Virus record (IMG/VR): IMGVR_UViG_3300009370_001221
Coordinates: 1-64,000 of that record
Strand: one strand, 5' to 3'
DNA: 64,000 nucleotides
In this document: positions 4,536 through 63,914 of the stretch, piece after piece
Numbering within the stretch: position 1 is the first letter of the stretch
How the letters are laid out: each line of letters opens with the position of its first letter
Program-made: the position numbers and the translations under genes
The notes under the pieces: model-generated
Told to the model about the DNA's origin: nothing
The model's database searches: none
The model's input: only the letters and a program-made list of their open reading frames with translations

Positions 4536-4574
4536 AATAATGTTTCCATTTATATGTATTTATTAAATATTAAT

Positions 4575-5498
4575 ATGAAGTTAGATTTAACCAAACAATA
4601 TATTGACTTAGAAACTGTTAATAAATTTATTGAATACAATTCTGATTTTTCTGACGTAAGACCTATACCAAATCCACATTTAGACGTAGTGTTTATGAGT
4701 TATAATGAGAAAGATGCTGATAAACATTATAAATTATTAAAAAAACGTGTACCTAACGCTAAACGTGTAAATGGTGTTAAAGGAATACTTAATGCGTATA
4801 ATGCGTGTAGGGAAATAACAGAAACTCCATACTACTTTATAGTTGAAGGAGATTCTATGGTATGTAAGGATTTTAACTTTAAACCACCGCAAAAATGGAC
4901 TAAACACTTAACCACATTAACTAATGACGAAATTAGTTATGAATATGTTAAAAGAAAACATAATATTAATTGGAATTCATTAAATCCGGTAAATGGTGAG
5001 ATACTTAATCATAGTCCTGTGGCTTTAGTTTGTAAAAGCACAAACAATTATAACTTATTTGAAAAATTCAAACTGCCTAATAATTATGACATCGATAATA
5101 CATATGAAATATTTGATGAAACTATAATTGAGGAAGATTATTGGAAAATGTGGGGTTCATGGCAAGAAAATAACATAGCAAGCATAAGTTTTTTTAATAC
5201 CTCGCCATATGACTCATGGAAAACAGGATTTAGAATTGGAAATAGACTAACTTATAAACTTCTTAATGAGACAAATAAACAAAACCATAATGATTATACT
5301 ATAAGATTAGATAAATGGTCTAGTGTAGGATATGAGCAAAAAAATGGTAAATACTGTATAGAAGGAGTGACATACGGCATAAAATGTGCTAAAATATGTA
5401 ATAATTGGATAGAGGAATACAGAAATACTTCAGACAATTATGATTGGTTAAGAGAAACTTTTGAGAAAGAATATGGAACACAACATAATACTAACTGA
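4575..5498 (+). CDS. Glycosyltransferase-like protein (GT-A fold), paralog of 12812..13549
   Basis: DVVFMSYNE...AKRVNGVKGI...FIVEGD motifs shared with 12812..13549; start reassigned to the ATG 5 nt after TAAATA. Confidence 0.6.
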   Translation: MKLDLTKQYIDLETVNKFIEYNSDFSDVRPIPNPHLDVVFMSYNEKDADKHYKLLKKRVPNAKRVNGVKGILNAYNACREITETPYYFIVEGDSMVCKDFNFKPPQKWTKHLTTLTNDEISYEYVKRKHNINWNSLNPVNGEILNHSPVALVCKSTNNYNLFEKFKLPNNYDIDNTYEIFDETIIEEDYWKMWGSWQENNIASISFFNTSPYDSWKTGFRIGNRLTYKLLNETNKQNHNDYTIRLDKWSSVGYEQKNGKYCIEGVTYGIKCAKICNNWIEEYRNTSDNYDWLRETFEKEYGTQHNTN

Positions 5499-5802
5499 AA
5501 CAGCAAAAAAACAGTTACTAACAGTTGCTACTAAAAATGACGTACCATACGTCCGCTATTCACTTGATGGCGGCGGGTGCTCAGGCTTAATTGGCAAATG
5601 GGAAAATTCTGACGAGTTAGAAGATGGTGATATTACTTTTGATTTAGGTGAGAGTAAACAATTCCTCATTGATAAATTTACAATTACACATATGACTGGT
5701 GCAACAATTGATTATACTGGTGATTTTATGCCAGCATTTAAAGTTACCATCCCAGATACTGCATCTTGTGGGTGTGGTGAATCCTTTATGATGAAGGGTT
5801 AG
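5473..5802 (+). CDS. iscA: A-type Fe-S cluster carrier (IscA/SufA/HesB family)
   Basis: GGGCSG and SCGCGESF signature motifs. Confidence 0.92.
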   Translation: MEHNIILTETAKKQLLTVATKNDVPYVRYSLDGGGCSGLIGKWENSDELEDGDITFDLGESKQFLIDKFTITHMTGATIDYTGDFMPAFKVTIPDTASCGCGESFMMKG

Positions 5803-6433
5803 TAATAAAGTTGTAAATATCTTTCCAATTTTTAGCAACTAAAGCAGGGCCTGGATAATCCATATTATGACCATGTTCCATTAGTATACCACGCAACCCC
5901 ATTTTTTCGCCAGTATCTACATTTTTCATTTTATCTTCTATCCACCAGCATCCTGAGTCCCTATAAGGTTCTAATGCGTCATCTTTATCAACGCCAGTAT
6001 CTAAACAAACTACTTTTTCAAATGCGGTTTCACCAAACAATTTGGCTAAATTCTGTTCTCTTAAACGTATCGCGTGTCTATTCAAACTTAATGATGTAAT
6101 TGCGTGAAATGCGTAACCATGTTGCTCATGTAATTTTTTTACATAAAACATAGCATCTCGTAATGGGGGGAGGAAACCTATTGAAGCACTCTCATTAAAA
6201 AACTCTGTTAATTTTTTAGCATTTGTACCAGTTATACCAAAACGCTTTGCTACGCTATAAACTAGTTTATGCCCATCTTCTGCTGTGTGTCCGTGCTCTT
6301 CCATCCACGTATGAAACGCGAATTCCCAGTCTAGCAAGACACCATCAACATCGGTTAATATGATTCTATCTTTCTTCATTGTTGAGTGACTTGTGAGTAG
6401 TGTTGCCAAAGAATTTACTTCTAAGGTAACCAT
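5786..6433 (-). CDS. HAD-superfamily hydrolase (5'-nucleotidase-like, T4 30.2-like)
   Basis: DVDGVLLD motif I and WIEDK motif; may start at MKKDRI (6379). Confidence 0.8.
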   Translation of the reverse strand: MVTLEVNSLATLLTSHSTMKKDRIILTDVDGVLLDWEFAFHTWMEEHGHTAEDGHKLVYSVAKRFGITGTNAKKLTEFFNESASIGFLPPLRDAMFYVKKLHEQHGYAFHAITSLSLNRHAIRLREQNLAKLFGETAFEKVVCLDTGVDKDDALEPYRDSGCWWIEDKMKNVDTGEKMGLRGILMEHGHNMDYPGPALVAKNWKDIYNFITNPSS

Positions 6434-6444
6434 TATATTCGTAT

Positions 6445-6651
6445 TTACGAGTCATTGCTAGAAGGTTTAGTGGTGTTTTTATACCAACCATCTCCTTTTA
6501 AAATAAATGATGATAATGAGGGTACTCTTTTAAATGTTTTCTCGCCACAATTTGGGCAAAATTCTATTGGCTCATCCTTAATGGATTGTGTTATTTCTAG
6601 GGTATGTTCGCAATTATCGTCTTCACATTTGTATTCATAAGTTGGCATCAA
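6445..6651 (-). CDS. FmdB-family zinc-ribbon protein
   Basis: MPTYEYKC...CPNCG...FILKGDGWY. Confidence 0.88.
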   Translation of the reverse strand: MMPTYEYKCEDDNCEHTLEITQSIKDEPIEFCPNCGEKTFKRVPSLSSFILKGDGWYKNTTKPSSNDS

Positions 6652-6941
6652 TCATCCTCTCGAATAATTACTCTATGTTTAATTACTGGGTCTGCTAATT
6701 GTATCATTGTTACTTCTTTTAATGAACCTGCATAAATTTTAGTATCACCTTCAAACTTTCTCATAACACGTTCTAACCATATCACTTGATTAGAGTGTTC
6801 TAACATTTGTACTTCTTTCTGTGTTCTATGGGATTTTCTTGGATTTAATTTCCACATGCGTATTGGACGCCACGCAAACCATTCATGCCATTGGCTCAGT
6901 CTAATTGCTCGTTCTTCTCTTGTTTCTCGTGTCCAGCGCAT
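6648..6941 (-). CDS. Hypothetical phage protein
   Basis: WHEWFAWRPI...WLERV motif; stop/start overlap with the neighbour. Confidence 0.55.
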   Translation of the reverse strand: MRWTRETREERAIRLSQWHEWFAWRPIRMWKLNPRKSHRTQKEVQMLEHSNQVIWLERVMRKFEGDTKIYAGSLKEVTMIQLADPVIKHRVIIREDD

Positions 6942-6954
6942 AAACTATTTAGTT

Positions 6955-7767
6955 TCATAAAAATGCTGTGCTTGTAATAGGAACGGGATTGTAATAATTC
7001 TCAATTAGTTCGCAGTCATCATCAAATCTAACATCTGCTGTAGGACTGTATTCCATAACTAATATTTTGCAAGGGAGTTTTGTTTCGTTATATATACGGT
7101 GAAATTGTCCTGATGGAACATAAAAATGCATATACTTTGTTAATGAGCGGGTTTTTAGTTTATTAACATCTTCTGGCCAAGCATATTCTACTTGACAATC
7201 ACCTTTAGCAACAAACCAAAATTCACTTTTCTTCTTATGACGTTCCATTTGCATTGTTGCGCCGGGATCTAAATGTACTTCCTTTACACGACATGTTGTG
7301 TCATTGTACAATACATTATAATAACCAAATTCCTCATACGACATACCAAATTTATAATTCTTAATTAAGTCACTTGAGGAGTTTTTCTTGTCATCACCGC
7401 CAATACTAAACACAAATTCTACACCCTCTACTTCTTGTTCTGGAACATTATCTTTACCACGATCTCCACCATTAGCAAATACAATTGTGTCATCAGGGTA
7501 ATGTCTTTTAACTTTGTTTAATGCATCTATAGCAGTATTGTCATTATCATTAAACGAGAAAACTTCATCCACCATTTGTAAATTGCGTACAATAAGGCGT
7601 CTTTCCTCAAATAACATAAAAGACCTGCCTTTTTTGCGTTGAAGCCACTTATCACTGTTTAACGCCACTACGAGTTTATCTCCTAGTGCTTTGGCTGAAT
7701 TAAATAAAGCGATATGTCCTTTGTGAATAGGATCGAAACCGCCTGAGACTACTATAATCTTTGACAT
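6955..7767 (-). CDS. Cytidylyl/adenylyltransferase (RfaE/TagD-like) fused to a cupin (type II phosphomannose isomerase-like)
   Basis: SGGFDPIHKGH (HxGH), FANGGDR, NSSS; C-terminal cupin with RHKKKSEFW and HRIYN. Confidence 0.85.
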   Translation of the reverse strand: MSKIIVVSGGFDPIHKGHIALFNSAKALGDKLVVALNSDKWLQRKKGRSFMLFEERRLIVRNLQMVDEVFSFNDNDNTAIDALNKVKRHYPDDTIVFANGGDRGKDNVPEQEVEGVEFVFSIGGDDKKNSSSDLIKNYKFGMSYEEFGYYNVLYNDTTCRVKEVHLDPGATMQMERHKKKSEFWFVAKGDCQVEYAWPEDVNKLKTRSLTKYMHFYVPSGQFHRIYNETKLPCKILVMEYSPTADVRFDDDCELIENYYNPVPITSTAFL

Positions 7768-7848
7768 GTTAATATTTAACTATAAATATACTTAACATAT
7801 ACTATTATATTATATTTCAATGATATTGTCAAGGAAAGAGGAATAATA

Positions 7849-13549: not shown

Positions 13550-13550
13550 T

Positions 13551-15418: not shown

Positions 15419-15764
15419 CAGGCCAATCTCTGAATAATGCGTGTTGTATATTGTCTGCAACATGCTGATTAAAGGCATGATGCTTTGTTTTAAGTTGACT
15501 TTCTATTTCGTCTAATGCATGATGTTCTACTTTAGCGACTCTCTGAAAAGCATTTTCTAATTGAGACATGTCTTTTGTTTCAATCATAATATGCCATTCA
15601 GGCAAATCTTGTATACTACGAAAGCCTAATTTACACCGAGTAATACGATAAGACTCGATTTTGTGTTCTTCTTTGAGTGATTTTAAAAATTCTCGAAGGT
15701 TATGTGCCCATTCTTTATCGGTAATATCACCTTCGATATCACACCAAACATGATAGATATCCAT
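15411..15764 (-). CDS. Conserved hypothetical protein (DUF6614-like)
   Basis: YRITRCKLGF...PEWHIMIE...ALFRDWPD. Confidence 0.6.
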   Translation of the reverse strand: MDIYHVWCDIEGDITDKEWAHNLREFLKSLKEEHKIESYRITRCKLGFRSIQDLPEWHIMIETKDMSQLENAFQRVAKVEHHALDEIESQLKTKHHAFNQHVADNIQHALFRDWPDE

Positions 15765-15790
15765 ATAGATATTTAGTGTAGGATTTAGTC

Positions 15791-16243: not shown

Positions 16244-16595
16244 TTGCGTTCATTTGTTCACGCAGATTAACTTCTTCACTTACTTGTTTATAAATTTTAA
16301 TATTTTCTTGAATTTCTTTTAATTCGTTCTCTAGATGATTTAATCTCATATTCTGTTCAGCATCATCAGGTAATGAACCCAATTCACCACGAGGCCATTT
16401 AACACGAAATTCATTATTTGCTTTAACATGGACATCTTGAATTGCTAGATTATGCTCTAAAAACGTAATACGTCCTGTTACATTAAAATAACCAGTAATA
16501 GCAAGACCTACAAAGACGAACAATGCTATCAAATTACGAACTGGGATAGTTATCATTGATGAATCACTAACTGTCATACTTGTTTGTTTACTCAT
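16224..16595 (-). CDS. Membrane protein with coiled coil
   Basis: One TM helix then coiled coil; TAAATA-N5-ATG. Confidence 0.6.
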   Translation of the reverse strand: MSKQTSMTVSDSSMITIPVRNLIALFVFVGLAITGYFNVTGRITFLEHNLAIQDVHVKANNEFRVKWPRGELGSLPDDAEQNMRLNHLENELKEIQENIKIYKQVSEEVNLREQMNAIEVKSN

Positions 16596-16640
16596 GCCAA
16601 TATTTAAAGTGATGTTTTAATGATTAAAGCACTACTATAT

Positions 16641-17306
16641 TACTGCTGTAAATTATCCACTATTATTTCATATTAGCTTGTTCATTTTCTAAAACTATTG
16701 GATTACCATCTTTATCGGTTTTAGCGTACATAATATAAAGACTTAATCTTTTATAATTACATTTGGGAACCGAATGAACAATTCTTGGTTCAAGATAATT
16801 ATGATTAATATAACCCCTATTTAAACCATATTTTATTATTTTGTCTGAACCATCCATTTTAAATATAGTTCCAAAATTATCATTATCATTTAAATAAATT
16901 TGTATTGCAAGATGAACTTTATAATTATCAACATGATTACTCATAGAGAATCCTGGTTCATCCTTCCACAAAAAGGCATTATTAATAATAACAGGGTGAT
17001 CAACTGCGGTTTTTATAACAGAATCACAAAATTTCTCAATATCTTGTTTAACATCTAAATCCCAAAGATCTAATTTTTTACGAATACCACTCGCAACAGA
17101 ATAATTTATATCCACAAATTCATTATTGTTTGCAATCGATAAGATTTTATCAAGAATTTCTTGAGGAAAGAAATCTTTTACTTCAGTAACACGCATAAAT
17201 CGTCCTCCATTATTAATAAAATGGTAGTCGATTATGATTAATATATAGCTATGTTACCGCCATGTCAATATTTAACGTAATACTGCTATAAGTTATCCAC
17301 TATTAT
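16641..17306. repeat. 26-bp direct repeat pair (16641-16666, 17281-17306) flanking one gene
   Basis: TACTGCTGTAAATTATCCACTATTAT vs TACTGCTATAAGTTATCCACTATTAT, 2 mismatches. Confidence 0.8.
16663..17196 (-). CDS. 2OG-Fe(II) oxygenase
   Basis: HVD...IYLN...HSV...RLS motif set; GGAGG RBS. Confidence 0.75.
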   Translation of the reverse strand: MRVTEVKDFFPQEILDKILSIANNNEFVDINYSVASGIRKKLDLWDLDVKQDIEKFCDSVIKTAVDHPVIINNAFLWKDEPGFSMSNHVDNYKVHLAIQIYLNDNDNFGTIFKMDGSDKIIKYGLNRGYINHNYLEPRIVHSVPKCNYKRLSLYIMYAKTDKDGNPIVLENEQANMK

Positions 17307-17323
17307 AAATAGAACTTTACAGG

Positions 17324-18292: not shown

Positions 18293-18372
18293 TTTAATCT
18301 CCTTTTGGTGGAGGTGGTGGGGATCGAACCCACGTCCAGAATGCATATTGTCTACATCATACGACAATAAAG

Positions 18373-18890: not shown

Positions 18891-19048
18891 TCTTCGCCTT
18901 TAAATAGTGTCCATGCACCATAAATTATTGCGCCCCAGGCCGCCCACTTAACCAGTGGTGAAAATAAGAGGCATACTACACCAACAGCGACTAATACGCC
19001 GCCATCCCATGATGATCTTTCTGCCCATCGTGCTTTTAAATAGTCCAT
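18887..19048 (-). CDS. 53-aa two-helix membrane protein
   Basis: AGGAGA RBS; [53 protein letters not shown]; ATGA overlap; not in ORF track. Confidence 0.7.
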   Translation of the reverse strand: MDYLKARWAERSSWDGGVLVAVGVVCLLFSPLVKWAAWGAIIYGAWTLFKGEE

Positions 19049-19083
19049 ATTGTTATTCTCCTATGGTTTATATTTATAAAATA

Positions 19084-21296: not shown

Positions 21297-21347
21297 TCGT
21301 CGCTCCTAATCCGTCTTCAGTATTTAGCGCAATCTATAAATATTGGA

Positions 21348-22427
21348 ATGAATCCAAATCATAAATTCTTCTGCATAGAACCATATGTTAGTATGTCAAT
21401 AACAGAACCTGGCAAGGTATTTTGTTGTTGTTTACATGAAGGAGGTAAAGTAACTACTCCTGACGATGTATGGAATGATCCTTACCTTAAAGATATTAGA
21501 GCAAAATTTGACCGGGGAGAAATACCAGAAGAATGTGAAGGTTGCGTCGAAAACGAAAAACATAGTGACGGACGCTCGAGTAGAAGACTAGACGTTAACA
21601 GAAATTGGTTAAAACTACATAATAATTATGAAGATTACATCGATTCTGATGCTCCATATAGATTTGATTTTTGGGTAGGTAATTTATGTAATTTAGCATG
21701 TAATACATGTACATCTTATTATAGTTCAACATGGAATACGTTACTACAAAGACCGGCTGGCCATGATAGAAATCACAGAAACAGCATTGATATAAAAGAA
21801 TGGAAACCTATTACTGAAGATCCTCCAAACATTGATTATAAAAATTTAGAATGGATACATTTTAATGGTGGAGAACCATTACTCACAGCTACTCATCTTA
21901 AAACTTTAGAAAAAATACCAAAAGAACAACGAAGTTCAGTACGAGTAGAATATAATACTAATGGTACAGTAAAAGTAGATACTAATAGTGAAAAATACAA
22001 AATCTTTAAAGAATTTAGATCAGTTACCATGACATACAGCATAGATGGCATAGATGATGTTTTTGAAGAAATTCGTTGGCCGGCAAAATGGAATAAAGTA
22101 AGAGATAATATAGATAATTGGGTTGATCAAGTATGTGCAACTAAAGTAAGTGACAATTGGTTTTTTATGATAGGATTCAATTTAACAAAATCAGCATATA
22201 ATTACGATTCAATTAATGAAACAATAGACTACATCAAAGAAAGATGGACTGAACCTGTAAAAAATTATCTCATTCCGGAATACAAAAATTGGAACTATTA
22301 TGATATGATATTCTTATGCAACGATCACAGATCTATGAATTTTACCGATAAAGATTTTGAAGAATTTACACAAACCAAAGAGTTCATACGTGAAAAAGAG
22401 TTAATTGATCGGTTAAGAAAACGATAA
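21348..22427 (+). CDS. Radical SAM protein with N-terminal SPASM/twitch-like domain
   Basis: CNLACNTC (CxxxCxxC), GGEPLL, YNTNGT and SIDG; extra N-terminal Cys cluster. Confidence 0.88.
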   Translation: MNPNHKFFCIEPYVSMSITEPGKVFCCCLHEGGKVTTPDDVWNDPYLKDIRAKFDRGEIPEECEGCVENEKHSDGRSSRRLDVNRNWLKLHNNYEDYIDSDAPYRFDFWVGNLCNLACNTCTSYYSSTWNTLLQRPAGHDRNHRNSIDIKEWKPITEDPPNIDYKNLEWIHFNGGEPLLTATHLKTLEKIPKEQRSSVRVEYNTNGTVKVDTNSEKYKIFKEFRSVTMTYSIDGIDDVFEEIRWPAKWNKVRDNIDNWVDQVCATKVSDNWFFMIGFNLTKSAYNYDSINETIDYIKERWTEPVKNYLIPEYKNWNYYDMIFLCNDHRSMNFTDKDFEEFTQTKEFIREKELIDRLRKR

Positions 22428-25723: not shown

Positions 25724-25758
25724 AATACATATTTATGCTATTTCCAAGCATAAATAAT

Positions 25759-30856: not shown

Positions 30857-31147
30857 CTATTCTCCTATAATAACGTCTTCACTGCCCACAGCACGTGGAT
30901 GGCCACAAGTATCTTTATCAATTTTAGTTCGCAATGCTGGCTTTCCTTCAATAATAACTGACTTACATGTTGATACAGTTTTAGCACTACAATGAGGTGG
31001 GGATGGTAATGGACAAGGTGCATGAGGAGTGACATCCATTTGAGGTATGCCTGCTTTTCGTCCATTAATTAAGACAGATTCAGCACCGCCTTGAGCGATG
31101 CCGCCTGCTGAATTAGGGTCTTTGTCCCGCTGTGCTTTCCATGCCAT
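30857..31147 (-). CDS. PAAR-domain baseplate spike-tip protein
   Basis: SVLINGRKA, VTPHAPC..PPH, SVIIEGKPALR..DKDTCGH..GSEDVIIG. Confidence 0.88.
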   Translation of the reverse strand: MAWKAQRDKDPNSAGGIAQGGAESVLINGRKAGIPQMDVTPHAPCPLPSPPHCSAKTVSTCKSVIIEGKPALRTKIDKDTCGHPRAVGSEDVIIGE

Positions 31148-31159
31148 ACTACTATTTAT

Positions 31160-36311: not shown

Positions 36312-36326
36312 ATCTATATTTATACT

Positions 36327-38280: not shown

Positions 38281-38286
38281 TGTTAT

Positions 38287-38315
38287 ATTATAGTTGATTT
38301 ATATTTAAATGTCAA
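38287..38315 (-). promoter_or_regulatory. Consensus sigma70 promoter, predicted leaderless transcript
   Basis: TTGACA-17nt-TATAAT-6nt-ATG(38280). Confidence 0.8.
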
Positions 38316-39639: not shown

Positions 39640-39658
39640 ATAACATATTTATTCCGCA

Positions 39659-41017: not shown

Positions 41018-41038
41018 ACTATTATTTATATGGGATTA

Positions 41039-43174: not shown

Positions 43175-43657
43175 TTAAAAAACATGATTAAAATACATCG
43201 TGTTTAATTGTTTTAGAGCATATCTAGCCTTATACATGTATGTTTTCAGTCTATCTTCAAACAAATTGACTTTGAACCAATCTCCTTCATCTGCATATTG
43301 CCTCATTCTTTCCTTTGCAAATTTTAATTTTTCAATGTTTATTGAAAACTGCTCATCCAATTCTTTCACTTCTTTATACAACACACTATTTTGATTATTA
43401 TAAAAAATTGACAGCATAATTGCTGATTTTTTGTGTACAATATCTTTCTCTATTATAGAAAATCCACGATTAAACCCTTTCTTTAAAATATAGCCAGACT
43501 TGTTTTTTTGTATACGAATATCACCTACTTTAATACCTTTGTTTATTTTTTTAACTTTTAAATAATGAAGACGCTTCTCTTTCTTTAACTTATCAATTAA
43601 AGAATCGTATACATCAACGAATTTTTTATCAATTTTTTTCTTTGATTGCTGTTGCAT
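43175..43657 (-). CDS. Hypothetical basic protein
   Basis: ORF; TAAATA-N5-ATG. Confidence 0.6.
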   Translation of the reverse strand: MQQQSKKKIDKKFVDVYDSLIDKLKKEKRLHYLKVKKINKGIKVGDIRIQKNKSGYILKKGFNRGFSIIEKDIVHKKSAIMLSIFYNNQNSVLYKEVKELDEQFSINIEKLKFAKERMRQYADEGDWFKVNLFEDRLKTYMYKARYALKQLNTMYFNHVF

Positions 43658-43699
43658 AGTATTATTTAATTATAATTTAATAATTAGATTAATTACTGA

Positions 43700-46785: not shown

Positions 46786-47514
46786 TTAATATTTTTCGTA
46801 ATCATCAGCGTGTCCTTTTAAAGGACCGCCTGTAATTTTTCGAGCAATGCCTTTACCAATAAGGGCACCAGCACCAAACGCAGCCAAAGCACCCCAGGCA
46901 CCACCACCTGCACGAACTTTTTCAGGATTATCAACACCCTTAATCTCATAACCACCCTTACGAACAAATGATTCATATGGACTACGCAAATCACTACGAG
47001 CAGACTTTGCTTTCATTGCTTGTAATAAACGAGTTGCGCCAAGTTTACGTTCACTACCATATAATCTATTCCAATCACTCAATAATCTTCGTGTTGCACT
47101 ATATTGAGAATTGCGAATACCTAAATTTCTTTCAAGAGTCATCAAAAATTGTTTATCAAAGTTTGGATTTACTTTACCACTTGCAACTTGTCGTAAATAA
47201 TTTTTAAATTGCAATGTAGGCATACTCGCTCGTCCCATTGGTCCAATTTTATCCGCATAACGCTCTGGTTGGTTAAGTATAGCAACCCAATTATGCAAAT
47301 CAGTACCAGTAGTACGAATATTGTCGAATCCTGGATACGCTAATGTCTTTTTTGCGTATTCTTGGGCGAATTTCATAGAATTAGGATCATTCCTCATTGC
47401 TTGTAATGATAAAATATTCATAAACACCGATTCTGCTACTTCTTCTGCAGACATGTTTATTTGTTTAGAATTACGCAATGCTTTTGATTCAAAAATATTT
47501 TTAATAAATTCCAT
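46786..47514 (-). CDS. Hypothetical virion protein
   Basis: TAAATA-N5-ATG; Gly/Ala hydrophobic C-terminal segment. Confidence 0.55.
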   Translation of the reverse strand: MEFIKNIFESKALRNSKQINMSAEEVAESVFMNILSLQAMRNDPNSMKFAQEYAKKTLAYPGFDNIRTTGTDLHNWVAILNQPERYADKIGPMGRASMPTLQFKNYLRQVASGKVNPNFDKQFLMTLERNLGIRNSQYSATRRLLSDWNRLYGSERKLGATRLLQAMKAKSARSDLRSPYESFVRKGGYEIKGVDNPEKVRAGGGAWGALAAFGAGALIGKGIARKITGGPLKGHADDYEKY

Positions 47515-47522
47515 AATACTAT

Positions 47523-48788
47523 TTACCCACCTGCTAAAAAGTTACGTCGGGAAAATACTAATCTATCAATTAATTTTACGGCGCCGCCAACATGATCTAT
47601 TGCTACAAACCCTTCTGGGCCGGCAACTTCATAACCATTATCTGTTTTATAAAATGCTTGTATGCCTTCTATCTCATTAAGTTTTTTAAGCAGAATATTC
47701 TTAACTTGTATAATTTGTTTATAAACTGCCAATATTGACAACAATGTATTGCTATTATCTTCAATAAATTCTCTGGTTGCGTTTATTTTAGCAATCCGTG
47801 CTTCGGCAGCCGGACTCCATCCAGATTGTGTTTTGTCAGAAACACCACCGTCTTTAAGTTTATCTATTTCTGCTTGCTTTTTACTATCATAATAATCAAT
47901 AAACTCTTTCAAAAAAGCATTAGCATTTCCAACTTGTGGTAGGTCTGCTCTAATTTTACTATTAACAAATGGTTCAATATGCTCTCTAAACTCTTCATTT
48001 CTCATTAACGCATTAAATCTATTTGCATTTATTTTTTGTAAAATTACTTGTAATTTATCAAGTCCATTTGCTACTTGTGCTGTTTCACGTCCAGTCATTG
48101 TAGCACGACCAGTTAAATCTCTATAATCAGCATCTTGTGACCATACATTTTTATTTCCTACAGGGGCGGACGCACCAAATGATGCTGTAAGATCTGACAT
48201 TTCAGGGCCACCACTATATAATGTGTGCCATACAACACCAATCTCAGCCGCAAGTAATTCTTTTGCTAAGTCACTGTCCGCTGGAACAGCATATGCTATC
48301 TCATTTGGTTTAAAAACAACATATGACTCACCATCTATATCTTCGGTTGTTAAATCACCTTTAGTAAACATAATATCGCCTTGCAATATACCGTCAAAAT
48401 TAAGTTTACGCAAATGTTTCAATGCTATATTTAATTTATGTGCTAAACCTGGTATTTTACCATGATTTTTTCTAATATCTGCCGGGGTTTTGTTTAATAA
48501 TGGAGTAGCATTAAATACACTTTTTGTTCCTACAAAAAACTTACCATCTTTAGGATCATTACCAGCAATTACAGCAGGCTTACCATCCCATTTTACAGAT
48601 ATTCTGCCCGCTTCGCTTGTTCCTGATAACATTTCTGCTGTTTGTGCAAGATGATTTATTGCTTTCTTTACACCTTGATAACCTTGATAAAATACTAAAT
48701 CCTCTATATGAGTCATATGAGTATTTTTACCGCCAGTATCTTCAACAATCATCCATTTACTTTCGCCTTGGACTTCAAATAGTTTCAT
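47523..48788 (-). CDS. Conserved large-phage protein (DUF6267-like)
   Basis: HMTHIED, VKWDGKPA, GILQGDIMF, PEGFVA and VKLIDRLVFSRRNF. Confidence 0.65.
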   Translation of the reverse strand: MKLFEVQGESKWMIVEDTGGKNTHMTHIEDLVFYQGYQGVKKAINHLAQTAEMLSGTSEAGRISVKWDGKPAVIAGNDPKDGKFFVGTKSVFNATPLLNKTPADIRKNHGKIPGLAHKLNIALKHLRKLNFDGILQGDIMFTKGDLTTEDIDGESYVVFKPNEIAYAVPADSDLAKELLAAEIGVVWHTLYSGGPEMSDLTASFGASAPVGNKNVWSQDADYRDLTGRATMTGRETAQVANGLDKLQVILQKINANRFNALMRNEEFREHIEPFVNSKIRADLPQVGNANAFLKEFIDYYDSKKQAEIDKLKDGGVSDKTQSGWSPAAEARIAKINATREFIEDNSNTLLSILAVYKQIIQVKNILLKKLNEIEGIQAFYKTDNGYEVAGPEGFVAIDHVGGAVKLIDRLVFSRRNFLAGG

Positions 48789-49827: not shown

Positions 49828-50316
49828 TTAATTATCAAAAACTGATGGTTTTCGTATGGCCCACCTACCAAAAGGGCGTACTGCCCAAAAGCAAGAAAAT
49901 ATTTTCCAATCTGGAATGTTAGGATCTGCATCATCCATGCCCTTCCTAAATACATTATCTGCTTGAGATCGTAATACTTTAACAGTTTGTGGATGCAATC
50001 CCTTTACTACTAAAACTTTACGTAAAGCACCATATAACACATCATGTATTACTGCCGCTCTCGCAACATCCCAGGGTGAAATAATATTCCATGTAATACG
50101 TGGTATAGATGCTAAATCTGTTTCATAACCAACTGGTGCTGTGATTAAAAGAGTACTTGGTGTAGATTTCATATCTACATTTAAATTTGTCCAACTAGAA
50201 ACCCATCTATCCATTTCAAGACTTCTACTTTTTTCTATCTCATATGTAAGAGGTTCAGTAAGTACCCAATGCTTTGCGCCGTGAAATTCTGCTTTCAATA
50301 AACCATGCCATGCCAT
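49828..50316 (-). CDS. DUF1353-family protein
   Basis: GYETDLASIPR, AAVIHDVLY, ADNVF and AVRPFG. Confidence 0.85.
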   Translation of the reverse strand: MAWHGLLKAEFHGAKHWVLTEPLTYEIEKSRSLEMDRWVSSWTNLNVDMKSTPSTLLITAPVGYETDLASIPRITWNIISPWDVARAAVIHDVLYGALRKVLVVKGLHPQTVKVLRSQADNVFRKGMDDADPNIPDWKIFSCFWAVRPFGRWAIRKPSVFDN

Positions 50317-50345
50317 TATTGATGCTCCTTTTAATATATGTATAT

Positions 50346-51761
50346 TTATATTTCATCAGGAGTATTCATGTTGCGTAATAATGATCTTATCTTACTTCCA
50401 CTTGCTTCAGCAGTTACTTTTGGAGTATCCTCGTTAGGTTGCACTGTAGCACTTCTGTTTATTCTATCAAATATGTTAGTTGATTGTGTTTGTGTTGCTG
50501 TATAAGAAGTATCTTCCTCTTGTTGCCCTTCTTCTCCCAAATCTCTTATACGCAAACTGCTTATATCAAATTCTAAATCTACTTTTGAGCCAACCCCACT
50601 ACTGCTTCTTGTTTTCATAAACTGCACTTGATAACGTCCACGTTCACGCATTGCCCTACTCGTAAAAATACCAATAACATTATCTGCTGTATTAATTTTA
50701 CTAATACCACCTGCAATGTGACTATGATCAAACTCTATTTCATCAACTGCACTTCTGTTTAACTGCGATGCTGTAACAAATACAACATCTAACTCTTTAG
50801 ATAAGTTACGCAATTCTTCTGCAACATATTTGTCTTTAACATATAAATCACTTGGTGCAACTTTTGTGCTAATTGGCATACACAAATCTAAATAATCTAC
50901 TAACACCACATCTGCTTTCATACCTTTTTGCACATTTAATTCTTTAACATAACTTCTAAAATCATTAATATTACTTTGTGCTGGCATATATTTTATTTGT
51001 AAATTGCCTGCTTTTTTACTTACAAGTTTAATTTTCATTTCAACAGTATCCAAATCTTTAAATATTTCCTTTGTAGAAATATTGGACACCATACTATCAA
51101 TTCTCATTGCAGTTAATTCCTCACTCAACTCCAATGTAAAATATAATACATTGAGTCCTGCAAGCACCCAATTAACTGCTAAATTTTGCATAAACAAACT
51201 TTTACCACTACCACTACCACCTGCAAATATTTGTAACTCACCTCTATTAAATCCACCAAACAATTTTCTATCAAACATTTCCCAACCAGTGCTAACTTGC
51301 CCATTACTTGTTTTTAATGTCATTAAACGTTCGCGTGGATTGTCCCAATAATCAGTTCCCATGTCTTTTGTAAGACCAACCTGTACAGCATCTTTAATTT
51401 TGGCCTCTACTAAACCATAATCACCTTTCTCTAACAAATCCGCACTGTCTAATATTGCACGTTCTAGTTCTTTATGCCTACTAAACTGTTCAAACTCATC
51501 TAATAACCAATTACTGTGTTCTTCTAACTGCTCAGTCACAACATCTTGTAATTTGGAACCTGTTTTGCTGTTTATTTGATTTACTTCTGGCAATGTTTTG
51601 TATTGATCTACATAATTTAATACAAATGTTGCTATTGGCCGCAAACTTCTATCAAAATTCTGCGGATTGAATATATTTTGCACTCTAACAAATGCTTCTG
51701 GATTGCTTACTAGCATTTCCAAATATAATTTCTGCAATTCTACGTTATATTCTTTATTCAT
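50346..51761 (-). CDS. DnaB-like replicative helicase (T4 gp41-like)
   Basis: GGSGSGKS Walker A, TLELSE, VDYLDL, TASQLNR and KTRSSSGVG. Confidence 0.93.
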   Translation of the reverse strand: MNKEYNVELQKLYLEMLVSNPEAFVRVQNIFNPQNFDRSLRPIATFVLNYVDQYKTLPEVNQINSKTGSKLQDVVTEQLEEHSNWLLDEFEQFSRHKELERAILDSADLLEKGDYGLVEAKIKDAVQVGLTKDMGTDYWDNPRERLMTLKTSNGQVSTGWEMFDRKLFGGFNRGELQIFAGGSGSGKSLFMQNLAVNWVLAGLNVLYFTLELSEELTAMRIDSMVSNISTKEIFKDLDTVEMKIKLVSKKAGNLQIKYMPAQSNINDFRSYVKELNVQKGMKADVVLVDYLDLCMPISTKVAPSDLYVKDKYVAEELRNLSKELDVVFVTASQLNRSAVDEIEFDHSHIAGGISKINTADNVIGIFTSRAMRERGRYQVQFMKTRSSSGVGSKVDLEFDISSLRIRDLGEEGQQEEDTSYTATQTQSTNIFDRINRSATVQPNEDTPKVTAEASGSKIRSLLRNMNTPDEI

Positions 51762-51774: not shown

Positions 51775-52746
51775 CTATGTTTGTAAACGTTTTTGGTGTA
51801 ATTGAATTTTTAACCGTGTGGACTGAACATTATCCAATATATTCTTTAATGTAAACATTTTGCCGTAATTTAATACTGCTTCATTTATATCTTTGCAAGT
51901 ATCATACCAAGTTGGGAAACTAACATCCCAATTGTACTTCATTGCTTGTGTTATAAGTTTATTACCAGCACTATCATTATCTGGCACCATTATTACTTGC
52001 CTATTTAGACTTTCTATCAAGTCTACTTGTGCATCACCAATATCACTACCTAATATTGCAACTCCATCTATAGCAATTGCATCAAATGGGCCTTCTGTCA
52101 CAATAACAAACTTACGATCTTCAGTTTGCCTGTCCATATTAAACACATAACCCGCAGGCGTACTAGTAAAATATTTTGGATTACCACGAACTGCTAATCG
52201 TGCCGTGTATCCTACTATTTCATCTTGCCAAAAGAATGGAATTATTACTCGTCTATCAAATTTTGTCTCTGTAATTGGTGTCCAGTAATATGGATAATCA
52301 TTTTCATCCAATCCACGCTTATGTAAATATTCTAATATAAGTTTATTATCAGATGCTAATGGACTACTTTGTTCCGGAAAATCTTTCTTCTCAAAAGTAA
52401 ATTCAATTTCCTCTGGAATTAAGTTTTGCTCAATTGCTGTCTCTTTTAATTGTATAGCAGTTAATACAAGACGCTTTATGTCAGATTCCGGAGTACCAAG
52501 CCAATCCATAAATTGTCGCAGTTTACGACTTAATGGCCTACCTGGTTGCCACCCTGTTTTATATCCACAATTAAAACAATTATACGATATTGCCTCTCCA
52601 TTAAGTATAATACCGCCTCTACCACGTTTGTCTTGCGTTTCTCCGTTATGAACACAACATGGAGCATTAAAGGACTGCCAGCCACTGGAACTTTTCTTTA
52701 CCTTTCCTGGTAAATTACTCATAATGACTGACTGTATTTGATTCAT
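51775..52746 (-). CDS. DNA primase (T4 gp61-like; zinc finger plus TOPRIM)
   Basis: CC..H / CFNC zinc finger, VTEGPFDA, PDND and KDINEA. Confidence 0.9.
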   Translation of the reverse strand: MNQIQSVIMSNLPGKVKKSSSGWQSFNAPCCVHNGETQDKRGRGGIILNGEAISYNCFNCGYKTGWQPGRPLSRKLRQFMDWLGTPESDIKRLVLTAIQLKETAIEQNLIPEEIEFTFEKKDFPEQSSPLASDNKLILEYLHKRGLDENDYPYYWTPITETKFDRRVIIPFFWQDEIVGYTARLAVRGNPKYFTSTPAGYVFNMDRQTEDRKFVIVTEGPFDAIAIDGVAILGSDIGDAQVDLIESLNRQVIMVPDNDSAGNKLITQAMKYNWDVSFPTWYDTCKDINEAVLNYGKMFTLKNILDNVQSTRLKIQLHQKRLQT

Positions 52747-52752
52747 ACAGTT

Positions 52753-52781
52753 ATTATATAGGAGTTACTGCTAAAAGTCAA
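52753..52781 (-). promoter_or_regulatory. Sigma70-type promoter, predicted leaderless transcript
   Basis: TTGACT-17nt-TATAAT-6nt-ATG(52746). Confidence 0.75.
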
Positions 52782-53557
52782 GGACGATAAAGTACTTTTG
52801 CTAATCCGCCTGAAGATGGAGTACATTTAATACGAATTCTACTATGAACACCGTTCCAATTTGTATAACCAACACCAGTTTCATTAGTTAGATTTAATGT
52901 CTTAATATCAAAATAATCATCATCTGCTAATGAAATATTATCATTCAATGTACCTTGTATTACAATAGTACCAGTATATGTACCTGAAAAATAAAAAGCC
53001 GCAGTTTGCAACGCAGAGTTTTGATTAAGTTTAGAATCTGCTACTAGTGGATTACTTGTATGAGTTGAACCTGATATAGTAAAGTCTGCTGTGTTCAATA
53101 CTTTACTATCTGTAAGTGTTGGGAAAACACCATCTGCAATTTGTAATTGTCCTAATACATCATATGCACCATCTACATAACCAATACTTGTATTCGCTTC
53201 ACCATCAACTACTTTTACTGAATAATTAAGATATTGAGAGTCTAAATCTAGTAAATCATTTTCTGTTATAATAACTTTTGCCGTTCCTTTTATTCCATCT
53301 ACTATTGTGGCCGTTTTACTTAATATCACGCCAGTATCACCAACATTATCTAAAATGTTAAATGTAATTGTTTTATCAGTAATTGTTAACGACTTTTGAT
53401 TATCGTTCTTTAGTGACAATTGTATGGTATTGTCAATACCCTTGTATACCTTTATAGGATGATTATACATTTCATACCCCCAATGCTCCTTATCAGTGTC
53501 CGCCTTTATTTTCAGATTAACATTTTGGTTATATAAATAGACCGTAGTAACTAACAT
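52778..53557 (-). CDS. Beta-rich virion structural protein
   Basis: IKVYKGIDN, YTGTIVIQGTL and KVLYR; beta-strand rich. Confidence 0.5.
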   Translation of the reverse strand: MLVTTVYLYNQNVNLKIKADTDKEHWGYEMYNHPIKVYKGIDNTIQLSLKNDNQKSLTITDKTITFNILDNVGDTGVILSKTATIVDGIKGTAKVIITENDLLDLDSQYLNYSVKVVDGEANTSIGYVDGAYDVLGQLQIADGVFPTLTDSKVLNTADFTISGSTHTSNPLVADSKLNQNSALQTAAFYFSGTYTGTIVIQGTLNDNISLADDDYFDIKTLNLTNETGVGYTNWNGVHSRIRIKCTPSSGGLAKVLYRP

Positions 53558-53583
53558 ATTTTAAGACCTTTTACTATATTTAT

Positions 53584-58242: not shown

Positions 58243-58851
58243 TTAAAAAGGTGGGATTTGCTCTCCTGTCCCTTCGTCTTCTTTAAGATCGTCAGGTTTA
58301 GTCATAACATCTTTCCCCTTTTGTTTAGCATCACCGGGATTTACATATTTGGGATTTCGTACAATACCTTTAGCAGAATCATTAATCCAATAAGGTTCTT
58401 TTTTTGGATCTGCTGGCGTACCTGTTGACGTATTATTACTATCTACACTTCCAGCACTTTTAACTGTAGTATTTGCTCTCGGTGCTATACCTGGTGCAAC
58501 TGTTCCGGTTGCATAACTAGTGCCAGGTGGACTGCCTGGTGGCACTGGTTTAGGTGTAGCGTATGGCATTGGTGGTGGTACCGATACTGCTGGTCCAGTT
58601 TTAACATTTGCTTTCGCATCTTGTTCGTCTTTTTGATCTTTTAACTTTTGAGCAAGGTTTAAAGTATCAACTATTTTTTCTAATGATGCAATTTGCTTCA
58701 CTAATAAAATAATCTCAGACTGTAATCCCTTGTTCTCGGCTTTGGCCTTATCCAACTCTTCCGTAAGGTCCTTAATAGATTCTTGAATAGATTTGATGTC
58801 TTTGGACACTTCGTGATGTTTCTTATAAAGATCACTCACTTGTGTACTCAT
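58243..58851 (-). CDS. Coiled-coil and Pro-rich protein
   Basis: Start reassigned to the ATG 5 nt after TAAATA. Confidence 0.55.
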   Translation of the reverse strand: MSTQVSDLYKKHHEVSKDIKSIQESIKDLTEELDKAKAENKGLQSEIILLVKQIASLEKIVDTLNLAQKLKDQKDEQDAKANVKTGPAVSVPPPMPYATPKPVPPGSPPGTSYATGTVAPGIAPRANTTVKSAGSVDSNNTSTGTPADPKKEPYWINDSAKGIVRNPKYVNPGDAKQKGKDVMTKPDDLKEDEGTGEQIPPF

Positions 58852-58865
58852 GCCAATATTTAGCA

Positions 58866-62412: not shown

Positions 62413-62435
62413 AATTCGCTCCTGCGTGTCGTTGG

Positions 62436-62819
62436 TTAAACTAATTCGTAGGGTTTACTGTAGTTCCCTACTTCGAGGTTGAAGTAAAAAGCGGTGTGGA
62501 AATAATCCACCATCGCATCACTTTCATCGAACCATTCCCGGCCACCTTCTGCTTTTCCGGGAGCCTTCTTGATAACATCAACAATGTCATCAAAGAGGTT
62601 AGCATGTTTACCATACTGGTAAGTATGATACTGATTGATTTGGGCATAGCCATTATCACCTTCGCGCATTATATCGGAAAAATCGACATTGCCTTTCTTG
62701 ATGGTGACTTTGACTGAGGAATAATGTTCCTTCTTTACTCCAAATTTCAAATCGGGTCCAAACTCTTCTTTGAGAGCATTTCGAATCTCTCGAACTTCTG
62801 CTGTGGTAATATAAGCCAT
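62436..62819 (-). CDS. Early-type hypothetical protein
   Basis: IRNALKEEF..KFGV...WFDESDAMVDYFHTAFY. Confidence 0.65.
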   Translation of the reverse strand: MAYITTAEVREIRNALKEEFGPDLKFGVKKEHYSSVKVTIKKGNVDFSDIMREGDNGYAQINQYHTYQYGKHANLFDDIVDVIKKAPGKAEGGREWFDESDAMVDYFHTAFYFNLEVGNYSKPYELV

Positions 62820-62825
62820 TGTGCC

Positions 62826-63080
62826 TTATCTCTGTGAGTGGTGGTTGGTTTCAACTGTGCATCTTGGGACGCCATAACGGCCATCCATGTTCCAGCGATG
62901 CGTCAGTTTGCCTTCGATCCCATACCGTTCAACAGTAAGGGGTGTATCAAACCCGCCCTTGAGCAGGTTAAATTCCGCAACCGCATCCATTAGGGTGGCA
63001 GTACTGGCGGATGTAAAAACCCGAGCACCGCCCATTATGGGTTCGCGGTATAAAATTTTAAAACAGCCTTGATCTAACAC
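62826..63080 (-). CDS. Hypothetical early protein
   Basis: First ORF after the putative early promoter. Confidence 0.5.
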   Translation of the reverse strand: MLDQGCFKILYREPIMGGARVFTSASTATLMDAVAEFNLLKGGFDTPLTVERYGIEGKLTHRWNMDGRYGVPRCTVETNHHSQR

Positions 63081-63156
63081 TTGGGTAACTCTCTGTTTCT
63101 TAACTTACAATACTACTCTAACATATTACTCAGATTTGTCACTCTTTTCGTGCCTG

Positions 63157-63252
63157 TAAGTGCTTGATTTCATTGAAGAATCACAAATTTCTGATATTCT
63201 GATAAGTGGTTGAAATCATTGAAGAAAAAAAGTCAATGAAATCAATGACTTA
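63157..63252. repeat. Direct and inverted repeats containing IHF-consensus sites
   Basis: TAAGTGCTTGATTTCATTGAAGAA (63157-63180), TAAGTGGTTGAAATCATTGAAGAA (63203-63226), inverted TCAATGAAATCAATGACTTA (63233-63252). Confidence 0.75.
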
Positions 63253-63335
63253 CTGAAATCACTGATTTTTTATAAAATTTATATATAATTAACCCTATAT
63301 TTTGTAGGGTATTTGGGGTATTCATAAATATTCAT

Positions 63336-63914
63336 ATGAATCTCACTGAATCCCAAATCACGCAGAAATCCCAAGAATGCTTTGATTTTTGGTTTAGGGA
63401 TGTTGGGGTAGAAGGGCACAATCACGGATACATGTCTAAATCTTGTTTTATGTTTGAACACGTATTACACGGAATGCTAAAACCTGCCTACGGGAAATAT
63501 ATGCAAATGGGCACTAATTTTGGCATTAGTTTTGACATATTGTATAGGCAATATGGCGATCGCTGTATTGGGATAGATTTATGGAATCCTCTCAATCATC
63601 CAAATATTATTGAAAAGGACATATATGATTTAGAAAATATGAATCTTGGATTCTGCAATGTTGATGCAGGAGATTTTAGATGGACTCCCGAGTTAAGAAT
63701 GTTCTCTATAGACTACGCAATGCGTAATGTTGTACTACAAGGCGGAATAATATTTACTGCTGGTGGAGATTTTGTTAATGAATGTTTAGGATTAAACTTA
63801 TACGAATATCTCGAGGATCATGGATTTACAATAGCAAATTATCATGATTTTACCGATAAAGAACCATTACCTAACATAGGTATTGAAAACGAACTAATTG
63901 CTATTTCTTCTTAG
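63336..63914 (+). CDS. SAM-methyltransferase-fold protein
   Basis: MQMGTNFGISF, IGIDL and GGII; TAAATA-N5-ATG. Confidence 0.55.
   Translation: MNLTESQITQKSQECFDFWFRDVGVEGHNHGYMSKSCFMFEHVLHGMLKPAYGKYMQMGTNFGISFDILYRQYGDRCIGIDLWNPLNHPNIIEKDIYDLENMNLGFCNVDAGDFRWTPELRMFSIDYAMRNVVLQGGIIFTAGGDFVNECLGLNLYEYLEDHGFTIANYHDFTDKEPLPNIGIENELIAISS

What the first reader, a model, noticed from the sequence alone, without database searches (positions are those of the whole stretch)
4564..63338. TAAATA-N5-ATG at 12 gene starts: late genes appear to be leaderless
Seen: TAAATA lies exactly 5 nt before ATG at 4575(+), 7767, 15764, 16595, 21348(+), 31147, 36311, 41017, 43657, 47514, 58851 and 63336(+), and 6 nt before at 25723 and 39639. 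None has room for a Shine-Dalgarno between motif and start. Established: the T4 gp55 late promoter is TATAAATA, with transcription starting about 6 nt after its last base. Inference: these mRNAs start on the A of AUG, which makes leaderless translation a genome-wide strategy here.
Basis: partly seen in the sequence, partly recalled or inferred. Interest (0 to 1): 0.72.

Follow-up and report, generated by a model that had tools for sequence, protein, structure and literature searches.

The report
Promoters fused directly to start codons
In this uncultured marine jumbo phage, the T4-type late promoter core TAAATA (and, for early genes, an ordinary bacterial promoter) sits so close to the ATG that the messenger RNA should begin on the start codon itself, so about one gene in seven is probably translated without any ribosome-binding leader; this is inferred from sequence, not yet from RNA.

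Summary
All 14 listed sites exist and are gene starts. In the window TAAATA-N5-ATG occurs 13 times against 3.5 expected. In the 235-kb genome it occurs 24 times against about 6 at other spacings, and 21 of the 24 are gene starts.

TAAATA behaves like a promoter core:
- It is the rarest hexamer of its composition, yet 5-8 times denser between genes.
- One-mismatch variants show no peak.
- It is unchanged at all 20 alignable sites in a relative with 86% identity, while the spacer letters drift.
- A gp55-like late sigma factor is encoded outside the window.

T4's TATAAATA spans -13 to -6, so N5 puts +1 on the A of ATG. The base before the ATG is a pyrimidine in 17 of 19 cases, against 39% at Shine-Dalgarno-led starts.

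About 20 other TAAATA sites lie 16-28 nt upstream with a GGAG leader. About 10 early genes carry TTGACA-N17-TATAAT-N6/7-ATG, so the leaderless layout is not confined to late genes.

Both Pelagibacter myophages tested show the same spike. T4, PA5oct, Atu_ph07, PBECO4, Melnitz and three cyanophages do not.

No RNA 5' ends could be mapped, so the start point remains an inference.

The parts
4564..4577 (+). TAAATA-N5-ATG, start of a 307-aa ORF of unknown function; first gene of a divergent unit
   Evidence: conserved in relative G001 with two changes in the spacer
7765..7778 (-). TAAATA-N5-ATG, start of a 270-aa cytidylyl/adenylyltransferase-like protein (phrog_7878 match from residue 3)
15762..15775 (-). 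TAAATA-N5-ATG, start of a 117-aa DUF6614 protein (profile match from residue 1)
16593..16606 (-). TAAATA-N5-ATG, start of a 123-aa protein (phrog_20984)
21337..21350 (+). TATAAATA-N5-ATG, start of a 359-aa radical SAM protein; in G001 the spacer is two bases longer
25721..25735 (-). TAAATA-N6-ATG, start of a 668-aa ORF
31145..31158 (-). TAAATA-N5-ATG, start of a 96-aa PAAR-like spike-tip protein; intergenic gap only 12 nt
36309..36322 (-). TATAAATA-N5-ATG, start of a 609-aa tail fibre / baseplate protein (Mtd_N plus pectate-lyase fold); intergenic gap 15 nt
39637..39651 (-). TAAATA-N6-ATG, start of a 439-aa ORF; intergenic gap 19 nt
41015..41028 (-). TATAAATA-N5-ATG, start of a 452-aa ORF; motif and spacing kept in seven related IMG/VR contigs
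43655..43668 (-). TAAATA-N5-ATG, start of a 160-aa ORF
47512..47525 (-). TAAATA-N5-ATG, start of a 242-aa ORF; the TAA of the motif is the stop codon of the upstream gene
58849..58862 (-). TAAATA-N5-ATG, start of a 202-aa ORF (first ATG; a GTG lies five codons upstream in frame)
63325..63338 (+). TAAATA-N5-ATG, start of a 192-aa ORF; first gene of a plus-strand unit
3759..3796 (-). sigma70-type promoter fused to the start codon: TTGACA-N17-TAGAAT-N6-ATG, nucleoside deoxyribosyltransferase-like gene
38278..38315 (-). sigma70-type promoter fused to the start codon: TTGACA-N17-TATAAT-N6-ATG, exonuclease gene
52744..52781 (-). sigma70-type promoter fused to the start codon: TTGACT-N17-TATAAT-N6-ATG, DNA primase gene
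19046..19076 (-). leadered late promoter for comparison: TATAAATA, then a 22-nt leader holding AGGAG, then ATG
50314..50348 (-). leadered late promoter: TAAATA, 26-nt leader with AGGAG, ATG of a tail assembly chaperone
53555..53582 (-). leadered late promoter: TATAAATA, 19-nt leader with AAGG, ATG of a virion structural protein
17261..17274 (-). TAAATA-N5-ATG that is not a gene start (4-codon frame; overlaps a TTGACA box); counted as a chance match

Best explanation
TAAATA is the core of this phage's late promoter. It is read by host RNA polymerase carrying the phage's own gp55-like sigma factor.

At about 25 genes (14 in the window) the promoter is placed so that transcription should start on the A of the ATG, 5 or sometimes 6 nt after the motif. 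That gives an mRNA with a 5'-terminal AUG and no Shine-Dalgarno leader. Such an mRNA would have to be translated by the leaderless route, in which the ribosome and initiator tRNA bind the 5' AUG directly.

About 10 early DNA-metabolism genes get the same result with an ordinary host promoter, TTGACA-N17-TATAAT, placed 6-7 nt before the ATG.

Many of the late sites fill intergenic gaps of only 8-26 nt, or overlap the upstream stop codon, so each such gene carries its own minimal expression signal. The remaining late promoters use a 16-28-nt leader with GGAG.

Shown: the motif, its spacing, its selection, the sigma gene, and the split by gene function. Inferred: the exact start nucleotide, the timing, and the mode of translation.
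For: 1. Spacing spike: 24 against about 6 in this genome, 46 against about 9.4 in the 322-kb relative G001 (Poisson P 2e-8 and 1e-17).
2. The gap distribution is bimodal: 5-6 nt with no Shine-Dalgarno sequence, or 16-28 nt with GGAG. This is what a promoter would give, not a ribosome site.
3. The hexamer is strict. One-mismatch variants show no peak at N5.
4. TAAATA is the rarest of the 15 A4T2 hexamers (observed/expected 0.59), yet occurs at 2.76 per kb between genes against 0.34 (sense) and 0.54 (antisense) inside genes.
5. Against G001 (86% nucleotide identity), TAAATA is unchanged at 20 of 20 alignable sites. In the 16 N5 sites tallied, the -1 base and the ATG are unchanged at 16 of 16, while spacer positions -5 to -2 keep 11-15 of 16.
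6. A gp55-like sigma gene is present, followed by SbcD/SbcC as in T4 and PA5oct.
7. T4's box spans -13 to -6 (PMC2988020), so N5 gives +1 on the A. The sigma70 class has its own modal gap of 6-7, which is the canonical distance from the -10 box to +1. Each promoter type therefore places +1 on the same base.
8. The -1 base is a pyrimidine in 17/19, 25/28 and 11/12 N5 starts in three genomes, against 39-47% at Shine-Dalgarno-led starts (Fisher P 8e-5, 4e-5, 1e-3).
9. Start codons in the promoter-fused classes are ATG in 35/36 and 54/55 genes, against 75-84% in the Shine-Dalgarno class. The promoter-fused scan accepted ATG, GTG or TTG starts, but gene calls here are naive.
10. Gene functions split by promoter type. 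TAAATA genes include large terminase, head-tail adaptor, baseplate wedge, PAAR, tail fibre, portal and tail tube. sigma70 genes include primase, exonuclease, dNMP kinase and SbcD.
Against: - No RNA 5' ends were mapped. Four metatranscriptomes gave only a few short contigs at depth of about 2 to 6.
- No homologue of the T4 sliding clamp gp45 or of co-activator gp33 was found by sequence in this genome or in G001. The activation mechanism may therefore differ from T4, and the distance from box to start is borrowed from T4 rather than measured.
- Cultured phages with the closest sigma factors (PA5oct, Atu_ph07, PBECO4) show no such spike.
- Some motif-bearing genes are not classic late genes: two radical SAM proteins, a cytidylyltransferase-like protein and an HNH endonuclease.
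- In tight operons, read-through transcripts would also carry these ORFs, so leaderless transcripts need not be the only template.
Confidence: 0.72

Rival explanations
1. The motif is a late promoter, but RNA polymerase starts a few bases away from the A of ATG. If it starts 1-4 nt upstream, the mRNAs have very short leaders. If it starts inside the ATG, these genes must be translated from longer upstream transcripts.
For: The box-to-start distance is taken from T4, not measured for this sigma factor. It is only 28% identical to T4 gp55 over 93 residues and about 90 residues longer. N6 and a few N4 sites exist, so the distance is not absolutely fixed.
Against: The peak is sharp at one spacing. 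The -1 pyrimidine / +1 A pattern sits exactly on the ATG. The sigma70 class independently lands on the same base with its own canonical gap. A 1-4-nt leader would still have to be translated like a leaderless mRNA.
Confidence: 0.15
2. TAAATA-N5-ATG is a translation signal on polycistronic mRNA. It would be an A/U-rich ribosome landing or re-initiation site in the short gaps between genes, not a promoter.
For: Many sites lie in gaps of 8-26 nt after a co-directional gene, and in several the TAA of the motif, or a TAA just before it, is the upstream stop codon.
Against: - The same exact hexamer also heads divergent units far from any upstream gene: 4575, 7767, 21348, 63336 and 91059.
- It also stands 16-28 nt upstream of genes that have their own GGAG.
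- One-mismatch A/U-rich variants are not enriched.
- The hexamer is avoided inside genes on both strands.
- It matches the box of a sigma family that the phage encodes.
- An A/U-rich enhancer would not explain the parallel TTGACA-N17-TATAAT-N6/7-ATG class.
Confidence: 0.08
3. The pattern is a by-product of A+T-rich composition and has no function.
For: The genome is 64% A+T, and short A/T words are common before start codons.
Against: Shuffles, neighbouring spacings, the reversed-pattern control, conservation in the relative and depletion elsewhere all reject this. Equally A+T-rich phages lack the spike.
Confidence: 0.01

Closest known systems
Bacteriophage T4 late transcription (TATAAATA box read by gp55, with gp33 and the gp45 clamp)
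   Same: An A/T-only -10-type box with no -35 element, tightly kept to consensus. A gp55-family sigma gene sits next to SbcD/SbcC genes. The motif precedes structural and packaging genes on either strand (PMC2988020).
   Different: - The conserved core here is 6 bp (TAAATA); positions -13 and -12 are not conserved.
- No gp45 or gp33 homologue was found.
- In T4 the box is not fused to start codons: 10 matches against 5 for the reversed control. Here about half the boxes are.
Leaderless transcripts of Thermus phages (phiYS40, Lalka27a)
   Same: These are phages in which most transcripts begin on the A or G of the start codon, with the -10 element 6 nt upstream, in both early and late classes (bioRxiv 10.64898/2026.04.20.719267).
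   Different: - The host there is Deinococcus-Thermus, where leaderless expression is the norm (PMC12340547).
- Their late promoters are TAGGGT with a C at -25 and use the host sigma plus an unknown factor, not a gp55-type sigma.
- Here many genes keep strong GGAG sites, so two translation modes coexist.
Pelagibacter myophages HTVC008M and Mosig (T4-like, Kyanoviridae)
   Same: The same TAAATA-N5-ATG spike: HTVC008M has 14 at N5 against a background of about 3.3. Twelve of these open ORFs of at least 60 codons, and all 9 that lie in the first 50 kb coincide with annotated starts (baseplate, head closure, tape measure and others). Mosig has 11 against 3. The spacers are even alike, for example GTATT and GTAGT.
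   Different: They belong to a different phage lineage: 141-147 kb, true T4-like, with recognisable gp33 and gp45. Their sigma factor is only about 30-35% identical. No mention of the fused arrangement was found in the papers searched, and late-promoter prediction was reported as unsuccessful in pelagimyophages (PMC7029224).
PA5oct / Atu_ph07 / PBECO4 group of jumbo phages
   Same: They hold the closest sigma factors (46%, 42% and 38% identity) with the same neighbouring genes. PA5oct and Atu_ph07 also encode a bS21 ribosomal protein.
   Different: No TAAATA-N5-ATG enrichment: 15 against 12, 15 against 9, and 5 against 11. The PA5oct paper reports only TATAATA/TTGAC promoters (PMC7318152).
Classical single leaderless phage mRNAs (lambda cI from pRM)
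   Same: The promoter is placed so that the mRNA begins with AUG, and translation needs the 5'-terminal AUG (PMC10491246).
   Different: Those are isolated regulatory genes. Here about 36 genes in both temporal classes, including major virion and packaging genes, use the layout.

Membership tests
T4-type late promoter system | A/T-only -10-type box (TATAAATA) with no conserved -35 element, upstream of late genes | tested here: met
   An exact TAAATA core is present, with nothing conserved upstream of it. It lies upstream of terminase, adaptor, baseplate, portal and tail tube genes. Only 6 of T4's 8 positions are conserved.
T4-type late promoter system | Phage-encoded gp55-family sigma factor | tested here: met
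   G000 127005-127826, minus strand. Matches T4 gp55 at E 2.6e-6, phrog_12791 at 8e-76 and phrog_234 at 5e-24. It lies outside the window.
T4-type late promoter system | gp45 sliding clamp acting as mobile activator | tested here: inconclusive
   No match to T4 or HTVC008M gp45 or to PF09116 in G000 (67% complete) or G001 (90% complete). None was found in PA5oct or Atu_ph07 either. A gp44-like clamp loader is present in G001, so a divergent clamp may exist.
T4-type late promoter system | gp33 co-activator | tested here: inconclusive
   tblastn with the HTVC008M and Syn9 gp33-like proteins found nothing significant. gp33 is small and poorly conserved.
T4-type late promoter system | Transcription starts about 6 nt after the last base of the box | not testable with these tools
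   Metatranscriptome contigs were too sparse. Indirect support comes from the -1 pyrimidine / +1 A pattern on the ATG.
Leaderless mRNA | Primary transcript 5' end at, or within a few nt of, the start codon | not testable with these tools
   Inferred from promoter geometry only.
Leaderless mRNA | No Shine-Dalgarno sequence; AUG strongly preferred as start codon | tested here: met
   There is no room for a Shine-Dalgarno sequence. Start codons are ATG in 35/36 (G000) and 54/55 (G001) promoter-fused starts, against 75-84% in the Shine-Dalgarno class. TAAATA-N5-GTG or -TTG is not enriched.
Host sigma70 promoter (early class) | TTGACA and TATAAT boxes 16-18 bp apart | tested here: met
   66 sites pass a strict scan. 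Of the 21 that precede a gene within 150 nt, 8 have a gap of 6-7 nt to the ATG, and two more have slightly weaker boxes.

The most novel reading that the evidence does not exclude
Fusing promoters to start codons may be an adaptation to one kind of host, most likely SAR11-type streamlined marine bacteria, that two unrelated gp55-encoding phage lineages reached independently: this roughly 320-kb jumbo lineage and the T4-like pelagimyophages. This would imply that such hosts translate 5'-AUG mRNAs efficiently. The phages' own translation parts (a bS21 with an N-terminal extension, a two-piece tmRNA) might help shift ribosomes towards these mRNAs. The host link rests on 2 of 2 Pelagibacter phages showing the spike against 0 of 9 other cultured phages. 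The bS21 link is weak, because bS21 also occurs in three phages without the spike.
Probability: 0.25. Interest if true: 0.8.

Novelty: new variant of a known kind. Interest (0 to 1): 0.62.

Why it matters
T4-type late promoters and leaderless mRNAs are both textbook items. Their systematic fusion, in a phage whose other genes use strong Shine-Dalgarno sites, does not appear in the papers I could search.

If confirmed, four things would follow:
- Structural and packaging proteins that are needed in bulk can be made from leaderless mRNAs in a proteobacterial-type system.
- It would offer an explanation for why late-promoter prediction failed in pelagimyophages (PMC7029224).
- Gene callers could fix start codons in these phages by using TAAATA-N5-ATG as a start signal.
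- There is a culturable test bed, HTVC008M or Mosig on Pelagibacter HTCC1062, for asking how abundant ocean bacteria translate leaderless mRNAs.

The layout also shows how a 6-bp promoter lets every gene in a tightly packed operon carry its own expression signal at almost no cost in sequence.

Tried and rejected
- RNA evidence: two run searches found four metatranscriptomes holding 5-8% of the sampled words. Laying their contigs on 35500-41400 gave a dozen short pieces at depth of about 2 to 6, partly from a relative about 93% identical, with no usable 5' ends. The first run search failed as busy.
- Near-identical DNA in cultured phages: none. The 452-aa protein has no tblastn match in the phage collection.
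- gp45 clamp and gp33: no homologue found in G000 or G001.
- bS21 as a marker of the arrangement: rejected as specific, because PA5oct, Atu_ph07 and Vibrio phage 2.275.O encode bS21 without the spike.
- Host from bS21: the 5.8-billion-protein search timed out. The genome-collection scan returned one uninformative Clostridia MAG.
- Degenerate motif: one-mismatch variants of TAAATA are not enriched at N5.
- ARAGORN's second 'tmRNA' call (18306-18845) has no Rfam support.
- Poxvirus-like TAAATG late promoters were considered and dropped. This is a tailed phage with terminase, portal, tail tube and baseplate genes.

Full report
**What the window is.** The 64-kb window is the first part of a single 235,363-bp contig with 35.8% G+C. 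It is an IMG/VR viral record from marine metagenomes, rated 67% complete. It encodes a large terminase, portal, tail tube, baseplate wedge, PAAR protein, DnaB-type helicase, primase and a class II ribonucleotide reductase, so it is a tailed jumbo phage. There is no near-identical cultured phage. A 322,647-bp relative (G001, 90% complete, about 86% nucleotide identity over 179 kb) and a 158-kb near-identical fragment (G004) are in IMG/VR.

**The observation.**
- In the window, TAAATA-N5-ATG occurs 13 times against 3.54 +/- 1.75 in shuffles. The extra site, at 17261-17274, is not a gene start.
- Genome-wide, the histogram of TAAATA-Nk-ATG gives 24 at k=5 and 12 at k=6 over a background of about 6.
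- 21 of the 24 N5 sites are starts of real ORFs.
- TAAATA at -11 is the most position-enriched hexamer before gene starts, above any Shine-Dalgarno hexamer.
- Profile matches reach to within a few residues of the predicted N-termini, so these ATGs are the true starts.

**Is TAAATA a promoter?** Several independent lines say yes.
- The distances from TAAATA to the next gene start fall into two groups: 5-6 nt with no room for a ribosome site, and 16-28 nt with GGAG in the leader.
- The hexamer is strict. One-mismatch variants show no peak.
- TAAATA is the rarest of all fifteen hexamers of its composition in this genome, in G001 and in HTVC008M (observed/expected 0.59-0.67). Yet it is 5-8 times denser between genes than inside them, as expected if stray copies are selected against.
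- In the alignment with G001 the six letters are unchanged at all 20 alignable sites. In the 16 N5 sites tallied, the base before the ATG and the ATG are unchanged at 16 of 16, while the spacer letters and upstream flank drift. The spacing is kept at 19 of the 20.
- The genome encodes a gp55-family late sigma factor at 127005-127826 on the minus strand. It is 46% identical to that of Pseudomonas jumbo phage PA5oct and is followed by SbcD/SbcC genes, as in T4.

**Does transcription start on the ATG?** This step is inferred.
- In T4 the box TATAAATA runs from -13 to -6 (PMC2988020). TAAATA-N5 therefore puts +1 on the A of ATG.
- A second promoter class supports the geometry. Canonical TTGACA-N17-TATAAT promoters precede about 10 genes with a gap of 6-7 nt to the ATG. 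That is the usual distance from a sigma70 -10 box to +1.
- The two promoter types thus have different modal gaps, and both place +1 on the same base. A translation signal would not do this.
- The base before the ATG is a pyrimidine in 17/19, 25/28 and 11/12 N5 starts in three genomes. At Shine-Dalgarno-led starts it is a pyrimidine in 39-47%. Pyrimidine at -1 and purine at +1 is the usual preference at bacterial start sites (my own knowledge).
- The promoter-fused starts use ATG almost without exception, in line with the known need of leaderless mRNAs for a 5' AUG (PMC10491246).
- Direct RNA evidence could not be obtained. The metatranscriptome contigs were few and short.

**Which genes.**
- TAAATA-N5/6 genes include large terminase, a small-terminase-like protein, head-tail adaptor, two baseplate/tail-fibre proteins and PAAR. 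They also include two radical SAM proteins, an HNH endonuclease and a cytidylyltransferase-like protein.
- TAAATA-plus-leader genes include portal, tail tube, tail fibre, chaperone, virion proteins and the sigma gene itself.
- The sigma70-fused genes are primase, exonuclease, dNMP kinase, SbcD, a deoxyribosyltransferase-like protein and a dehydrogenase.
- The promoter classes therefore follow the early/late divide, but the leaderless layout occurs in both.
- By a simple classifier, 26 late and 10 early genes of 256 are promoter-fused, and 109 have a Shine-Dalgarno site.
- Many late sites fill gaps of 8-26 nt between co-directional genes. In two the TAA of the motif is the upstream stop codon.

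**Relatives.** Counts are TAAATA-N5-ATG against the reversed-pattern control.

| Genome | Matches | Control |
|---|---|---|
| G001 | 46 | 7 |
| G004 | 27 | 4 |
| HTVC008M (Pelagibacter) | 14 | 4 |
| Mosig (Pelagibacter) | 11 | 3 |
| Melnitz (OM43 host) | 5 | 3 |
| P-SSM4 | 4 | 6 |
| S-PM2 | 5 | 3 |
| Syn9 | 3 | 3 |
| Vibrio phage 2.275.O | 3 | 3 |
| PA5oct | 15 | 12 |
| Atu_ph07 | 15 | 9 |
| PBECO4 | 5 | 11 |
| T4 | 10 | 5 |

- In HTVC008M, 12 of the 14 sites open ORFs of at least 60 codons. All 9 sites in the first 50 kb coincide with annotated starts, mostly of baseplate and head genes.
- The trait does not follow the sigma phylogeny. It appears in this jumbo lineage and in both SAR11 myophages tested.
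- A pelagimyophage study reported that late-promoter prediction was unsuccessful (PMC7029224). I found no paper describing the fused arrangement.
- Leaderless transcription as a phage-wide habit is documented for Thermus phages YS40 and Lalka27a, with different promoters and a host phylum where it is the norm.

**Verdict.** The motif and its spacing are real and under selection. The promoter reading is well supported. The leaderless reading is the best explanation but lacks RNA proof. It is a new variant of known things rather than a new kind of system. It would gain interest if the link to SAR11-type hosts holds.

Noticed in passing
window 23021-23341 (-): The phage encodes a ribosomal protein bS21 homologue (PF01165, 58.9 bits, E 1e-16). 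It is 106 aa with an N-terminal extension of about 35 residues and is itself Shine-Dalgarno-led. It is 44% identical to the bS21 of Pelagibacter phage HTVC008M. bS21 is also present in G001, PA5oct, Atu_ph07 and Vibrio phage 2.275.O, and absent from T4, PBECO4, S-PM2 and Syn9.
   Followed up: partly
window 17903-18417 (-): A two-piece (permuted) tmRNA gene: Rfam tmRNA_permuted 119.7 bits and beta_tmRNA 99.6 bits, and ARAGORN also calls it permuted. Two-piece tmRNAs are reported mainly from marine phages such as Melnitz and pelagimyophages (PMC9004378).
   Followed up: partly
window 3759-3796, 38278-38315, 52744-52781 (-); also G000 93378, 126972, 155406, 215576, 222452, 225149, 228429: Canonical TTGACA-N17-TATAAT promoters sit 6-7 nt before the ATG of early or DNA-metabolism genes, so these early genes also look leaderless.
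   Followed up: yes
Pelagibacter phages HTVC008M (NC_020484) and Mosig (MT647606): Both cultured SAR11 myophages show the same TAAATA-N5-ATG spike at starts of late genes. The OM43 phage Melnitz and three cyanophages do not. This hints that the jumbo phage's host is SAR11-like.
   Followed up: partly
window 25759-25845 (-): A single tRNA-Asn (GTT) gene lies just upstream of the 668-aa gene that carries an N6 site.
   Followed up: no
window 38317-38467: This is a variable stretch of about 150 bp between the 439-aa gene and the exonuclease promoter. A metatranscriptome contig from a relative replaces it with 13 other letters, and the alignment with G001 also breaks here.
   Followed up: no
G000 13547-21727 against G001 ends: The two contigs are circularly permuted relative to each other: G001's ends fall inside the region matching window 15385-19367. 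The genome is therefore probably circular or terminally redundant and about 320 kb long.
   Followed up: no
window 21348-22427 (+); G000 91431-92768 (+): Two radical SAM genes carry the late TAAATA-N5-ATG signal, which is unusual cargo for a late promoter. A third radical SAM gene lies near the clamp loader in G001.
   Followed up: no
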